The translations under genes and the position numbers were made by a program. Shown here in pieces: positions 55,278-60,046 of a DNA stretch of 64,000 nt. Below the pieces are notes generated by a model. The model worked only from the letters and a program-made list of their open reading frames with translations, searched no databases and was not told where the DNA came from. Numbering within the stretch: position 1 is the stretch's first letter; every line of letters starts with the position of its first letter. The DNA is from Vitrella brassicaformis CCMP3155 (taxonomy: Eukaryota > Protista > Chromerida): positions 62,001 through 126,000 of the forward strand of contig CDMY01000241.1 in NCBI GenBank assembly GCA_001179505.1, in the 5' to 3' direction.

Positions 55278-58200
55278 TTAAGACGTCTGGACAGTCGGCT
55301 CCTTGAGCATCACAACACCCTCGGGCGTCAGACCTAGCACCACACAGAGACACGAGACACATTAACGATGCACGAAAGCATCATGGAATGGGTAAGTGTT
55401 TCTTTGTGTCTGACATACGCACATACCCGAGTTGTGGAGGACGATTTCGAGTTTGCCTGACTCGGGGTTCCGCCTGTAGAGGTAGGTGAACTTGGCGTGG
55501 GCCCTCTTCTCGCTGCCGTCCTTCTCCCAGAAGAGAAAGTCGTAGTAGCCGTTGTACGCCACCTTGCCGTTGCCCAGCTGGATCAGGTCCTCATCGGTCA
55601 CCTTGGGCGGGAACTCCGGCTTGATCTGATTGATTGATTGATGCACACACGCAGCGGGAGAAATGTTCGAGCCGCCATCAACCATGTGTCTGTCTCTGTG
55701 TCTGCCGGTGCGTGTCAGTCAGTGTGTCTGGCGTGTCTGTCTGGGTGACCTGTTTCCTGTCGAGGAAGCTCTTGAAGTAGTCGAGGATGGTCTCGCCGGT
55801 CTGGCGCGCGCCGATGCTGCCCGTGTCGACAGTGCCGAGCAGGTTGCCGGGGAGAGACGCGTCGTTGCTGTAAAGACCCACCACTGTGTCGGGATTCAGT
55901 GATTGAACTGAACACACACACACACACACACATACACACACAGAGAGAGAGAGAGAGAGAGAAGGAGATGAGCGAGCCGTTCACGTCTTAGTTGGTCATG
56001 TCGCTCACCGGCGGCGATCCACTGGTCCCTGGCGGTCTCGACCTCGGCGGCAGAGACCTTGTTGGGCGAGGGGAGCTCGATGACGCCCTCGGGTGTGAGG
56101 CCCGAGTTGTGGAGGACGATCTCGAGCTGGTTGTTCTTGGCGGGGTTGCGCTTGAAGACGTACGTGAACTTGGCGTGCGCCTTGGTGTGCGAGGCATCCT
56201 TGTTCCAGAAGAGGAACTCGTAGTAGCCTGACACACACAGACAGAAAAACAGAGCACACACATGGACCGAAGGCTCTTCTGTCTGCCCGTCGATGTGCGG
56301 TTTGCTCTCTCACCGTTGTAAGCGACCATTCCGTTGTCGAGCTGGATGAGGTCGTCGTCAGAGATGGCTTCGGGGAAGCAGGGCTGGATCTTCTCCTTGT
56401 CAAGGAAGCTCTTGAAGTAGTCCAGGATCGTCTCACCAGACTTGCGCGCACCAGTGGCCATTGTGTCAACGGTGCCTGACACAACCAACCACACACATAC
56501 ACGCCGAGCGATAGTACACGTTTGTCTACACGGCGGCTCACTCACCGAGGAGGGCGCCGGGGAGCGTGGCGTCGGCCGAGTAGAGGGAGGCGACCTTCTC
56601 GGGGTTGAGCGACTTGACTGCGGCCACCCAGTTGTCCCTGGCCGTCTCGACCTCCTTGATCGACACCTTCTCGGGGCGGGGCAGCTCGATCACGCCCTGG
56701 GGCGTCAGACCTGAGCAGGCCACACACGCGACAAAGCAACAATCGGTACACACATGGGTCAGGAGGCGGTGTGTGTGTGTGTGTGTGTCGCCATACCCGA
56801 GTTGTGGAGGACGATCTCGAGCTTGCCGGTCTCAGGGTTGCGTCTGTAGATGTAGGTGAACTTGGCGTGGGCCTTGAGGTGGCGGCCGTCGTGCTCCCTG
56901 CACACAAACAAACAGGACACAGCAATCAAGGTCATCGCTGTACGTCGCTGCACATGTCTGTCCTGTGCTTCTTAGGTACTGACTGACCAGAAGTAGAAAT
57001 CGTAGTAGCCGTTGTAGGCGACCATGCCGGGGCCCACAGGGATGATGTCCGCCTGAGTCACCTCGGGAGGGAAGGCAGGCTTGATCTGCACACAGAGGCA
57101 GAGGAAAGAACATTACATGTTGGCTCGTGTGTCGACGGTCCCTCCGGACGCACCTTCTCCTTGTTGAGGAATCCGACGAAGTACTCCCTGATGGTCGAGG
57201 GCGACTGGCGTCTCTTGGTCTCCATGGTGTCGACGGTGCCGAGGAGGTTGCCGGGGAGGCTGGCGTCGGCCGAGTACTGAGCCACCACTGTGTCGGGGTC
57301 CAGAGTCCGCACCGCGGCGATCCATGCGTCACGCGCCTCCTTCACCTCGGCAGGCGTGATGGGCTTCTCGGGCGACTCCAGCTCAACCAGGCCCTGGGGC
57401 GTCAGACCTGACATCACGAGAACAGCCGCAATGGGCATGGTGTGTCTGGGCGAGTGGAATGAGTGTGTCGTCGTGTGTTTTGATGATGCCCACCAGAGTT
57501 GTGCAGGGCGATCTCGAGCTTGCCGGTCTGGGGGTTGCGACGGTACACATAAGTGAACTTGGCGTGGGCCTTGAGCTGACGGCCATCCTTCTCGGTGAAA
57601 TAGAAGTCATAATAACCTTCACACACAAATAGAGCACCAGGGAAACCACCATGTGCATTGATTTGTTTCGAGCCATCTGTCTGTCAATCTGCTAACCGTT
57701 GTAGGCGACGGAGCCTGGGCCAACGTGAGCACCGACACGACAGACAGACAGAAACAAATGACCTGTCCTGAGGCGTGTTTGTCTTCTCATTGCCAAACCG
57801 ACCCTTGTCCAGCTGGATGAGGTCGTCCATCGTCACCTCAGGGGGGAAGGCGGGCTTGATCTGCACCACACCAGGCCCACCACACACAGAGGCATAGAGG
57901 GAGGGATGCACCATTCCGCTGTGTGCGTAGTAGATCACCTACCGCTGCCTTATTGCAGAAGACCTTGAAGTACTCGAGGATCGATGTGCGGCACTGACGG
58001 GCGCCGATCTCGACGGTATCAACGGTACCTGCACGCATGCCCAGCATCAAGTGAATGAATTGGCATGGACGAATGGGTGTGTCGCTGGTGTCCTACCAAG
58101 GAGCGCTCCCGGGAGAGCGGCATCAGCCGAGTACAGAGCGACGATCTTCTCGGGATCGAGCGACTCAACTGATCGCAACACAATCACGACACAACACATG

Positions 58201-58707
58201 GCAAGACAGAAAGTGAGACAGGAAATGAGACAACAAGCGCTCATGGATGTGATCAGCAGTGAGCACCACCCACACACTTGCTCGGACGCATTCCCCGATC
58301 ACTCGGTTGCATGCATGCACACACGGACGCCCTCCCTCCCTCCACCCACCTGCAGCGACCCATTCGTCGCGGACGGTCTTGACCTCAACTGGCGAGACGA
58401 AGCCCTTATAAGGGGTCTCACCGGGATGCGGCATCCCCACCTCAGCCTCAATGGCCGCCGCCTCGTCTTCAGTCACGCCGCTGCCGCTCTTGGTGAAGAT
58501 CCTGTCAAGGAAACCAGTGCTGGTCTTCTCAGCAGTGGCGGCCTCCTGGATGGCGAAATGCCTCGGCAGGGTGTGGCGGAGGTTTTTGGCCACGCGGCTG
58601 GCGAGAGGGCGGAAGGTGAACTGGAAGGCCGATGGCGCATCGCGGCTGACTGCAGCTGATGCTGTTGCTGCCGCGAGGCAGACAAGAGCGCAGATCCGAG
58701 CGGTCAT
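55278..58707 (-). CDS. Iota-class carbonic anhydrase-like protein (LCIP63/COG4875, SnoaL/CaMKII-AD fold), four tandem domains, bipartite targeting peptide
   Basis: Four repeats of W..AV.xLxPxxxVxxYSxDA.LPG.LLGTVDT...I.xYF..F..K...AYNGYYxF.F...KAHAKFTY.Y...xLEIxLHNSG. The N-terminus has a hydrophobic signal followed by AFQF and an Arg/Lys-rich stretch. All exon phases join. Confidence 0.8.
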
Positions 58708-58953: not shown

Positions 58954-60046
58954 ATGCAACCCATCCGACTCACGCGGAATCGCCCTCCGCCTCCTCTTTC
59001 GGCACCCTCTGACTCCCCTCTCCCTCCCTCGTCAGCTGCCGCCTGCATCCATGTCCGCCCTCTCCGCACTCTCCGATTCTCCCCGTCTTTCCAGCGGCGG
59101 CGGCCTTTCGACCGCATGGGCGGCACTGAGCTCCGACACCTGGCTCTCAAATTCGTCGCCTGCAAGCTGCACAATGCCGAGCTGTGGCGGGGTCTGGCCA
59201 GCCGGACAGTCGCCATCGGCCGTGAGAGGCGGCTGATGAGTCCGCGCGACCTCGCCCTCATCATGAATGCCTTCAAGCGGATGGGCATCTCCGAGCCGGC
59301 GCTGCTCAGCGAGTGCGAGCGCATCGTCACCGACCGGCTGCACGAGTTCTCGGGTGAGGACCTGGCTTTAGTTGCGCTGAGCTACGCGGCCATGGAAGGG
59401 TCGACGGTGGGCTTGTTGATGACGGTGGCTGACCGGGTGTGTCAGCAGGCGGACGAGGGGCGGCCGCCACAGCAGGTCTTATCGTGGGTGCATTTGGTGG
59501 GCGCTCTCGCAAAGGCAGGGGTGCCGCATCAGGTGAGAGAAGCATTCACACACAGACAGACAGACAGACAGACGCATCACACGGCCTTCTTGATGCGGTC
59601 ATTCGGTTCCATCCAGGAGTGTTTCCAGTTCGCGGCTCCGCCCATCTGTGACGCGCTGGAGGGGAGGGAGCGCTTCGCCGGCAGGCTCATCGCCAAGATA
59701 GCCGCGTCATATGCACGGTCAGACGGGCGTACAGCGGGGAATAGGACGGACGGCTCAGACGTTGATACGTGCTCTCGTATGTGTGTCGTGATTGCAGGTT
59801 TGGGTACAAGCATGACCGGCTGCTGGAGCTGCTGGCCAAACGCATCCCTACTGTGTACCTCAGCGACGCTGAAATACTGGTAAGGACAGCACAAGTCCTG
59901 GTGCACTGTGATGACTGCGGCAACCACACCGTGTGCCCTCTTCCTGTGCCTGTGTGTGTGTGTGCAGCTGCTGCAGCGAAGCTTCAAGGCGCTGCAATTC
60001 GAAGACGGCACTCTCGACCGCATCGTGCAGCTGAGGCTGAATGGGT
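58954..60046 (+). CDS. Helical-repeat (heptatricopeptide/FASTK-like) organellar RNA-binding protein; 3' end unresolved
   Basis: Repeats about 37 aa apart: SPRDLALIMNAFKRMG, SGEDLALVALSYAAM, WVHLVGALAKAG and LIAKIAASYAR. N-terminus is Arg/Pro/Ser-rich. Confidence 0.6.

What the first reader, a model, noticed from the sequence alone, without database searches (positions are those of the whole stretch)
55278..58707. Four-domain iota-carbonic-anhydrase-like protein, probably plastid-targeted, in a chromerid
Each of the four repeats follows the LCIP63/COG4875 pattern: W..A+..LD...V...Y...A.L..TV...R...I..YF..FL.K, then G.Y.F, KA++T+VY and a terminal +I..H.S..PE/Q. The diatom low-CO2-inducible iota-CA LCIP63 is also multi-repeat and plastid-located (established). 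The N-terminus is a signal peptide plus AF and a basic transit-like region. Inference: this is a component of a CO2-concentrating mechanism in a photosynthetic relative of apicomplexans, where I know of no characterised iota-CA.
Basis: partly seen in the sequence, partly recalled or inferred. Interest (0 to 1): 0.8.

Follow-up and report, generated by a model that had tools for sequence, protein, structure and literature searches.

The report
Four-domain HNSG-type iota-carbonic-anhydrase-like protein
The alga Vitrella brassicaformis expresses a gene for a secretory-pathway protein with four copies of a domain related to iota-class carbonic anhydrases; the domain keeps the four known catalytic residues but lacks the class's hallmark HHSS motif, and it belongs to a previously undescribed, unassayed sister branch of that enzyme class.

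Summary
Window 58707..55278 (minus strand) holds a 15-exon GT-AG gene. Its 708-aa product is identical to the public protein CEL95942.1 / A0A0G4EHH2 of Vitrella brassicaformis CCMP3155, which carries no functional name. Transcript contigs confirm all 14 introns. The protein has a signal peptide, a basic presequence of about 70 aa and four repeats of about 150 aa (59-71% identical).

The repeats are specific homologues of iota-carbonic-anhydrase domains: profile E 2.5e-21 to 3H51 and 1.6e-13 to 7C5X, against at least 0.03 for other NTF2-like proteins. The AF2 model (pLDDT 93.5) matches 3H51 at Z 18.1. They are not LCIP63/COG4875-type. In a tree of 140 domains they fall in a separate clade (SH-aLRT 99) whose motif is HNSG, not HHSS.

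Sequence and structure alignment place the His and Ser of HNSG on catalytic His197/Ser199 of Anabaena all2909. Thr and Tyr are also kept, with the same spacing (18/73/2). Only the two non-catalytic motif residues differ.

The best reading is a probably metal-independent CO2 hydratase, possibly plastid-targeted. Activity, localisation and CO2 regulation are untested. The scan noted this stretch once before (s1-201870).

The parts
55278..58707 (-). Whole coding region: 15 exons, 14 GT-AG introns, 708 aa. Exons in + coordinates (high..low): 58707-58350, 58168-58097, 58028-57943, 57860-57803, 57714-57697 (18-nt microexon), 57616-57494, 57407-57154, 57085-56988, 56897-56797, 56710-56546, 56475-56314, 56227-56009, 55907-55750, 55625-55427, 55333-55278.
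   Evidence: Gene model. It is identical to public protein P0001. Splice joints are seen in transcript contigs.
58654..58707 (-). Residues 1-18, signal-peptide-like hydrophobic N-terminus ending in ASA.
   Evidence: Kyte-Doolittle window means of 1.2-2.3 over residues 1-21. The cleavage site was not predicted with a dedicated tool.
58438..58653 (-). Residues 19-90, the presequence or spacer. The first 42 aa are basic (6 K/R, 3 D/E), rich in Ser/Thr/Ala and contain 'PSAFQF'. The last ~30 aa are acidic.
   Evidence: Composition. Its reading as a transit peptide is inference.
57495..58437 (-). Repeat 1 (aa 91-238). Predicted catalytic residues: Thr145, Tyr163, His236, Ser238.
56798..57494 (-). 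Repeat 2 (aa 239-389). Predicted catalytic residues: Thr296, Tyr314, His387, Ser389. This repeat was modelled by AF2.
56103..56797 (-). Repeat 3 (aa 390-540). Predicted catalytic residues: Thr446, Tyr464, His538, Ser540.
55428..56102 (-). Repeat 4 (aa 541-690). Predicted catalytic residues: Thr597, Tyr615, His688, Ser690.
55278..55427 (-). C-terminal tail (aa 691-708, beginning GLTPEG as each inter-repeat linker does), the last intron and the stop codon TAA at 55280-55278.

Best explanation
The gene encodes a soluble four-domain member of an uncharacterised 'HNSG-type' branch of the iota-carbonic-anhydrase superfamily. Each ~150-aa domain is an NTF2-like cone-shaped barrel. In the solved iota-CAs the barrel's internal cavity holds the catalytic Thr, Tyr, His and Ser and two Phe, and all of these residues are retained here. 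The most likely mechanism is the metal-free one shown for Anabaena all2909 and Bigelowiella Bn86287: the Thr and Tyr hydroxyls, assisted by Ser and His, activate a water molecule that attacks CO2 held against the Phe/Trp wall. Only two motif residues differ from HHSS, namely the second His (to Asn) and the second Ser (to Gly). Neither was among the residues mutated in that study. The second His is the one proposed to bind Mn at domain interfaces in diatom LCIP63, so I predict activity without a metal. The N-terminal signal peptide takes the protein into the ER. The basic, hydroxylated presequence probably carries it on into the four-membrane plastid, where interconversion of HCO3- and CO2 could feed the form II Rubisco reported for the related chromerid Chromera (PMC3468483). 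The four domains arose by tandem duplication of an intron-containing unit within the chromerid/apicomonad lineage. Shown here: the gene model, its transcription, the repeats, the homology, the fold, the residue conservation and the clade separation. Inferred: CA activity, metal independence, plastid location and a role in carbon supply.
For: The gene model and transcription rest. Homology is specific to iota-CAs: the profile of 30 HNSG-type domains finds 3H51 (Xanthomonas COG4875, 'apparent iota-CA') at E 2.5e-21 over the full length and 7C5X (B. natans iota-CA) at 1.6e-13. The next hits are yybH at 0.028, and ketosteroid isomerase (KSI) and the CaMKII association domain above 0.1. hhalign of the HNSG profile against the HHSS profile gives 99.8% probability and E 3e-30 over 134 columns. 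The AF2 model of repeat 2 has pLDDT 93.5 and pTM 0.86. VIA-align puts 3H51 first (Z 18.1, rmsd 1.9 A, 30% identity), with 7C5Y/7C5V/7C5X at Z 16 and 22-24% identity; other NTF2-like entries show 5-18% identity. For the catalytic residues, the all2909 sequence in Hirakawa's supplement ends ...ITHHSSLPYEQ at residue 205, so His197 and Ser199 are the FIRST His and the FIRST Ser of the motif. HMMER aligns HNSG column for column with HHSS. The end points of the structural alignments (model 156 = 7C5V 204 = 7C5Y 591) put model His149/Ser151 on His197/Ser199 and His584/Ser586. Thr-Tyr-His-Ser spacing is 18/73/2 in repeats 1, 2 and 4 and 18/74/2 in repeat 3, which matches all2909. W29, Y45, L56, Y76, F80, Y113, H149, S151 and P155 are invariant, and T58, F77 and F115 are at least 90% conserved, across 39 HNSG- and HHSS-type domains. 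Of 211 near-complete-ended domains, 143 carry HNSG and only 4 have lost the His.
Against: No member of the HNSG clade has been assayed. The motif that the literature treats as diagnostic of iota-CAs, (H)HHSS, is absent (PMC6776030, PMC8425729). NTF2-like enzymes with similar folds catalyse many different reactions. The clade has its own invariant residues whose role is unknown: an Asp two positions after the catalytic Thr (where HHSS-type has Ser), the Asn, the Gly and the TP.G tail. Relatives occur in Piridium (non-photosynthetic as far as I know, not checked here) and in bacteria (a Bradymonadales MAG and planctomycete-like contigs), and the bacterial genes have no carbon-metabolism neighbours. 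The closest paralogue is tail-anchored and has no leader. Plastid targeting could not be predicted with the tools on hand.
Confidence: 0.55

Rival explanations
1. The HNSG-type domain has the iota-CA fold and ancestry but a different activity. It could be another small-molecule hydratase, lyase or isomerase, or a ligand-binding protein, that uses the same cavity.
For: The hallmark HHSS motif is not met, and the clade is separated from HHSS-type domains by a 99-supported branch. The clade has invariants of its own (Asp60, Asn150, Gly152, Thr154, Gly157). It occurs in Piridium (non-photosynthetic as far as I know) and in heterotrophic-looking bacterial contigs. The NTF2-like fold is functionally promiscuous: KSI, dehydratases and epoxide hydrolases all score Z 15-17 against the model.
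Against: All four residues whose mutation reduced or abolished CA activity in all2909/Bn86287, plus the two Phe, are conserved in more than 90% of the clade's domains and with identical spacing. The changed motif residues are not the catalytic ones. Carbonic anhydrases are themselves common in non-photosynthetic organisms.
Confidence: 0.3
2. This is an ordinary member of the LCIP63/COG4875 (metal-dependent) iota-CA family.
For: The best solved match by sequence and by structure is the COG4875 protein 3H51. The whole protein reaches 31.4 bits on Pfam CaMKII_AD against a cut-off of 22.1. It has four repeats, as T. pseudonana LCIP63 does (PMC6776030).
Against: It has HNSG instead of HHSS. The Thr-Tyr spacing is 18, not 15. 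There are a 3-aa and a ~7-aa insertion relative to COG4875 domains. No single repeat passes any Pfam model. The clade is reciprocally separated from HHSS-type domains. The His proposed as the Mn ligand in LCIP63 (His140, PMC8395977) is Asn here.
Confidence: 0.1
3. The protein is a non-catalytic oligomerisation or scaffold protein built from CaMKII-association-domain-like hubs.
For: Pfam labels the domain CaMKII_AD, and 21 of 30 clade members hit that model. LCIP63 and all2909 form oligomers.
Against: The HNSG profile scores genuine CaMKII association domains only at E 0.3-0.6, against 2.5e-21 for 3H51. The strongest conservation is at the residues that line the cavity in the solved iota-CAs rather than elsewhere.
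Confidence: 0.05

Closest known systems
COG4875-type iota-carbonic anhydrases (Thalassiosira pseudonana LCIP63; Burkholderia territorii BteCA-iota; Xanthomonas campestris 3H51)
   Same: It shares the NTF2-like barrel. 3H51 is the best sequence and structure match (E 2.5e-21; Z 18.1, rmsd 1.9 A, 30% identity). The Thr, Tyr, His, Ser and two Phe of the cavity are conserved. Like the diatom proteins, it has two to four tandem domains behind an N-terminal targeting leader.
   Different: The motif is HNSG, not (H)HHSS. The outward-facing His proposed as the Mn ligand is Asn. An Asp replaces the Ser two residues after the catalytic Thr. There are 3-aa and ~7-aa insertions, so the Thr-Tyr spacing is 18 rather than 15. 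The clade is separate (SH-aLRT 99). No activity data exist.
COG4337-type metal-free iota-carbonic anhydrases (Anabaena all2909, PDB 7C5V; Bigelowiella natans Bn86287, PDB 7C5X/7C5Y)
   Same: The spacing of the four catalytic residues is identical to all2909 (Thr-18-Tyr-73-His-2-Ser). The 'YFVG' stretch around the Tyr is shared. Structural Z is about 16 with 22-24% identity. Eukaryotic members are multi-domain, and Bn86287 is located in the plastid stroma.
   Different: Sequence similarity is weaker than to COG4875. Only the N- and C-terminal parts align to 7C5X by HMMER, and 7C5V was not found with the clade profile at E<=1. The motif is HNSG rather than HHSS.
CaMKII association domain (Pfam PF08332) and SgcJ/EcaC family (TIGR02246)
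   Same: These are the database labels under which iota-CA domains, and most HNSG-clade members, are currently filed: 21 of 30 members hit PF08332 and 11 of 30 hit TIGR02246.
   Different: Genuine CaMKII hubs score only E 0.3-0.6 with the clade profile. The labels reflect shared fold and not function.

Membership tests
iota-carbonic anhydrase class (COG4875 + COG4337) | NTF2-like cone-shaped alpha+beta barrel domain of about 130-160 aa | tested here: met
   AF2 model of repeat 2 has pLDDT 93.5. The Foldseek top hit is 3H51. VIA-align gives Z 18.1 to 3H51 and Z 16 to 7C5V/7C5X/7C5Y.
iota-carbonic anhydrase class (COG4875 + COG4337) | Sequence homology to iota-CA domains clearly above other NTF2-like families | tested here: met
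   Profile E is 2.5e-21 (3H51) and 1.6e-13 (7C5X), against at least 0.028 for all other PDB chains. hhalign gives 99.8% probability and E 3e-30.
iota-carbonic anhydrase class (COG4875 + COG4337) | C-terminal (H)HHSS motif, called the specific signature of the class (PMC6776030, PMC8425729) | tested here: not met
   All four repeats read (A/V)LHNSG. HNSG aligns column for column with HHSS. The first His and the first Ser are kept; the second His is Asn and the second Ser is Gly.
iota-carbonic anhydrase class (COG4875 + COG4337) | Catalytic Thr, Tyr, His and Ser (all2909 T106, Y124, H197, S199) plus cavity Phe residues | tested here: met
   The residues are T145/Y163/H236/S238, T296/Y314/H387/S389, T446/Y464/H538/S540 and T597/Y615/H688/S690, with YF..F in every repeat. 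The assignment of H197/S199 to the first His and first Ser comes from the all2909 sequence and from the end points of the structural alignments.
iota-carbonic anhydrase class (COG4875 + COG4337) | Measured CO2 hydration activity | not testable with these tools
   This needs recombinant protein and a Wilbur-Anderson, stopped-flow or 18O-exchange assay.
LCIP63 / COG4875 subtype | Groups with HHSS-type COG4875 domains in a domain tree | tested here: not met
   The tree has 140 domains, with the motif columns left out. 94 HNSG-type domains are separated from 46 HHSS-type domains by one branch with SH-aLRT 99. Caveats: the tree is unrooted, the search was quick, and it contains no COG4337 sequences.
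LCIP63 / COG4875 subtype | Each domain recognised by Pfam CaMKII_AD (PF08332) | tested here: inconclusive
   The whole protein sums to 31.4 bits against a cut-off of 22.1, but no single stretch passes. Repeat 2 alone hits nothing at E<=0.001, while 21 of 30 clade members do.
LCIP63 / COG4875 subtype | Bipartite plastid-targeting leader and stromal location | tested here: inconclusive
   A hydrophobic N-terminus, a basic Ser/Thr/Ala-rich stretch and 'PSAFQF' are present. SignalP and ASAFind were not available, and the Phe motif is weak in Vitrella.
LCIP63 / COG4875 subtype | Induction at low CO2 | not tested
   The only evidence is presence in transcript contigs. No CO2-contrast data were at hand.
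CaMKII association domain (hub) | Significant similarity to genuine CaMKII hub domains | tested here: not met
   With the clade profile, 2UX0 scores E 0.31 and 1HKX scores E 0.58.

The most novel reading that the evidence does not exclude
HNSG-type domains form a third, metal-independent subclass of iota-carbonic anhydrase. It would be spread over chromerids and apicomonads, small green algae and some bacteria. In Vitrella the four-domain form would be the stromal CA that supplies CO2 to form II Rubisco. Activity in this subclass would show that the second His and second Ser of the 'diagnostic' HHSS motif are dispensable, and that current motif- or Pfam-based CA surveys miss a whole branch.
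Probability: 0.3. Interest if true: 0.7.

Novelty: new variant of a known kind. Interest (0 to 1): 0.5.

Why it matters
Iota-CAs are counted in ocean surveys and genome annotations by the HHSS motif or by generic NTF2-like labels. A branch with about 140 domains in public data that keeps the catalytic tetrad but not the motif would be invisible to those surveys. It also gives a natural experiment on the unresolved metal question, since COG4875-type enzymes are reported as Mn- or Zn-dependent and COG4337-type as metal-free. Here the His proposed as the metal ligand is Asn in almost every member. Chromerids are reported to fix carbon with a low-specificity form II Rubisco (shown for Chromera in PMC3468483), and no carbon-concentrating component has been characterised in them in the papers I could search. 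For these organisms the gene is a concrete, expressed candidate to test.

Tried and rejected
- Pfam and NCBIfam scans of single exon translations gave nothing usable because the pieces are too short.
- The word-indexed homologue search with the full-length protein returned only the protein itself. Relatives came from the exhaustive phmmer run on one exon, a single-repeat search and a profile search.
A 6-sequence alignment matched only one of 185,579 species genomes, a Bradymonadales MAG, because the single pattern used was narrow. This says little about the true bacterial range.
- I looked at the gene neighbourhoods of five clade members. The bacterial neighbourhoods show no transporters, carboxylases or other carbon-metabolism genes. 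Two of the five contigs are eukaryotic (Copine-RING, kinases, DEAD helicases).
- Literature searches for HNSG, for the accession numbers and for Vitrella or Chromera in the two founding iota-CA papers and their held supplements found nothing. The chromerid localisation paper's supplements do not list the protein.
- I first considered that HNSG replaces the catalytic His and Ser. I rejected this after reading the all2909 sequence and the mutagenesis primers.
- I considered that the domain is COG4337-type because the catalytic spacing is identical to all2909. I did not adopt this, because sequence and structure scores favour 3H51.
- The second structure-prediction job was not used, because the tool returns no coordinates and inter-domain contacts could not have been read.
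Full report
**Gene and transcript**

Reading the reverse strand, I assembled 15 exons joined by 14 canonical GT-AG introns of 68-181 nt. They run from the first in-frame ATG at 58707 to TAA at 55280-55278 and give 2127 nt and 708 aa. An exhaustive phmmer search with the 84-aa translation of exon 7 returned a 708-aa protein, P0001. P0001 is identical to my model at every residue. It is CEL95942.1 / UniRef100_A0A0G4EHH2 of Vitrella brassicaformis CCMP3155. NCBI calls it 'unnamed protein product' and UniRef calls it 'DUF4440 domain-containing protein'.

Logan contigs of three runs (X1 and X2 of one study, X7 of another) carry only about half of the genomic words. When laid on the window they show CT..AC joints at 12 of the 14 introns, including both sides of the 18-nt microexon 57714-57697. 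The other two introns lie in microsatellite stretches that the tool skipped. They are accounted for by the 199 and 3 record letters between the flanking pieces. A DNA run (X3) is contiguous across the region and shows none of these intron joints; its only listed joint is an 810-base skip of another kind. The gene is therefore transcribed and spliced as modelled. Contigs cannot say how strongly it is expressed.

**Architecture**

Residues 1-18 are hydrophobic and end in ASA. Residues 19-60 are Ser/Thr/Ala-rich with 6 K/R against 3 D/E and contain PSAFQF. Residues 61-90 are acidic. Four repeats follow: aa 91-238, 239-389, 390-540 and 541-690. They are 59-71% identical. Each ends in (A/V)LHNS and is linked to the next by GLTP(Q/E)G. 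An 18-aa tail closes the protein.

Twelve of the 14 introns sit at five homologous alignment columns with the same phase in different repeats:

| Alignment column | Phase | Repeats |
|---|---|---|
| 35 | 1 | 1, 4 |
| 59 | 1 | 1, 3 |
| 88 | 0 | 1, 2, 4 |
| 113 | 1 | 1, 3 |
| 155 | 1 | 1, 2, 4 |

The repeats therefore arose by duplication of a unit that already had at least five introns, and introns were later lost differentially.

**What the domain is**

Single exon pieces were too short for Pfam. The whole protein gives only summed, sub-threshold-per-domain hits to DUF4440, SnoaL_2 and CaMKII_AD. I therefore used relatives. The phmmer run, a single-repeat search and a profile search gave about 160 proteins.

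Aligned domains fall into two kinds:
- One kind has LLPTVS ... DYF..FL ... G.Y.F ... ARYSF.Y ... HHHSS.MPE. This is the COG4875/LCIP63 pattern. JGI labels several of these proteins 'TIGR02246 family'.
- The other kind has ARD.W.AAV ... LLGTVD ... YF..FL ... P.FP ... YSGYY.F ... AKFTY ... HNSG.TP.G. All four Vitrella repeats belong to this kind.

Among 211 domains with a complete C-terminus, 143 carry HNSG and 54 carry HHSS. The remaining 14 are rare variants such as HISG, HTSG, HNSL and LNSG.

I built a maximum-likelihood tree of 140 near-complete domains with the four motif columns left out. It splits the two kinds by a single branch with SH-aLRT 99. The one apparent exception is an HQHSS variant of the HHSS kind. 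The four Vitrella repeats form one clade (support 87). That clade joins the single-domain Vitrella paralogue P0004 and the Piridium sociabile protein P0013 (support 97). The tree is unrooted and came from a quick search. The alignment was fitted to the HNSG-type model, and COG4337 sequences could not be included.

**Relation to known iota-CAs**

A profile of 30 HNSG-type domains (A1) was searched against all PDB sequences:

| PDB entry | Protein | E-value |
|---|---|---|
| 3H51 | Xanthomonas COG4875 protein, treated by Hirakawa et al. as an apparent iota-CA | 2.5e-21, full length |
| 7C5X | B. natans iota-CA | 1.6e-13 |
| 2GXF | yybH | 0.028 |
| several | ketosteroid isomerases, CaMKII hubs | 0.2-0.6 |

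hhalign of the HNSG profile against the HHSS profile gives 99.8% probability and E 3e-30 over 134 columns. AlphaFold2 on repeat 2 with that alignment gives pLDDT 93.5 and pTM 0.86, with the helix-helix-helix-sheet order of an NTF2-like barrel. Foldseek ranks 3H51 first. VIA-align gives 3H51 Z 18.1 (rmsd 1.9 A, 126 residues, 30% identity) and 7C5Y/7C5V/7C5X Z 15.9-16.1 at 22-24% identity. Many unrelated NTF2-like enzymes also score Z 15-17, but at 5-18% identity. The fold alone is therefore not diagnostic. The sequence profile and the identities are.

**The motif question**

The literature calls (H)HHSS the signature of the class (PMC6776030; PMC8425729). By that test the Vitrella protein fails.

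Which motif residues matter can be settled. In all2909, alanine substitution of Thr106, Tyr124, His197 or Ser199 abolished activity (PMC8132391). The all2909 sequence printed in that paper's supplement is 205 aa and ends ...RIITHHSSLPYEQ. His197 is therefore the first His and Ser199 the first Ser. The H197A primer confirms this. For LCIP63 the corresponding residues are His139 and Ser141, with His140 between them. His140 faces a domain interface and was proposed as a Mn ligand (PMC8395977).

HMMER aligns HNSG with HHSS column for column, both against 7C5X and against 3H51. The structural alignments end at model 156 = 7C5V 204 = 7C5Y 591. Provided there is no gap in the last strand, this puts model His149 and Ser151 on His197/Ser199 and on His584/Ser586.

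The Thr of LLGTVD and the Tyr of (E/D)YF..F align with the catalytic Thr and Tyr of 3H51. They lie 18 residues apart, and the Tyr-to-His distance is 73 (74 in repeat 3). These are the same distances as in all2909 (106, 124, 197, 199). COG4875 domains have a Thr-Tyr distance of 15.

Across 39 domains of both kinds, W29, Y45, L56, Y76, F80, Y113, H149, S151 and P155 are invariant. T58, R67, F77, G111 and F115 are at least 90% conserved.

So the HNSG branch keeps every residue shown to matter for catalysis, and it changes only the two motif residues that were not tested. It also has invariants of its own whose role I cannot assign: Asp two residues after the Thr, Asn150, Gly152, Thr154 and Gly157.

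**Distribution and context**

Named members are few:
- Vitrella: this gene, and a paralogue P0004 = CEM02078.1 that has no leader but ends in a hydrophobic 20-residue segment (tail anchor).
- Piridium sociabile: P0013, with an N-terminal hydrophobic anchor and the motif HTSG.
- Chloropicon primus: P0045, with an ~85-aa N-terminal extension.

Two members lie on compact eukaryotic contigs beside Copine-RING, kinase and DEAD-helicase genes. Bacterial members lie in a Bradymonadales MAG and on planctomycete-like contigs. The bacterial genes have no carbon-metabolism neighbours.

Several eukaryotic members have two domains (P0003, P0010, P0066, P0067). I saw none with four other than Vitrella's.

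No paper in the searchable library mentions the HNSG variant, these accession numbers or a chromerid iota-CA.

**Function**

The best-supported reading is that each domain hydrates CO2 by the metal-free Thr/Tyr/Ser/His mechanism described for COG4337 enzymes. The protein enters the ER through its signal peptide. Whether it goes on to the plastid is open. The leader looks bipartite, but in Vitrella the Phe at +1 is weakly conserved (PMC6668581), and I had no predictor. The related chromerid Chromera uses a form II Rubisco (PMC3468483 abstract). That makes a stromal CA plausible, but it is context and not evidence.

The main rival is a different activity in the same cavity. The hub-scaffold and plain-LCIP63 readings are weak.

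**Verdict**

The protein is public but functionally unannotated. Its clade is an undescribed variant of a known enzyme class.

Read laying was given 3601 letters.

Noticed in passing
window 55905-55973 and 56760-56796 (introns 12 and 9): These are CA/GT and CT microsatellite runs inside introns. The reads tool skipped them as repeats, which is why two of the 14 splice joints were not listed directly.
   Followed up: partly
window 58954-59883 (+): A 309-aa open reading frame starts 247 bp from the ATG of the iota-CA-like gene on the opposite strand (head-to-head). It has no Pfam hit at E<=0.01 and may be one exon of a larger gene.
   Followed up: partly
window 56245, 56902-56925, 57735-57760, 58318-58350 (DNA run X3): Contigs of the DNA run break or fork at several points inside the gene, including a joint 56925->57736 with 556 foreign letters. 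These are probably assembly-graph forks caused by the ~65%-identical internal repeats or by short shared words. They are not structural variants.
   Followed up: no
P0004 (Vitrella paralogue CEM02078.1, another contig): This is a single HNSG-type domain with no N-terminal leader. It has a C-terminal hydrophobic segment followed by KK, so it looks like a tail-anchored form. The Piridium homologue P0013 instead has an N-terminal hydrophobic anchor.
   Followed up: partly
P0005 (metagenomic protein, 427 aa, JGI contig of 1.7 kb): One protein combines an HNSG-type first domain, whose end is replaced by a Pro/His-rich stretch, with two HHHSS-type domains. It could be a natural fusion of the two subtypes, a frameshift or a chimeric assembly.
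   Followed up: no
P0001 database record: The precomputed Pfam list for this protein includes PF27546.1. That accession is absent from the Pfam copy I could scan, so I could not find out what it is.
   Followed up: no
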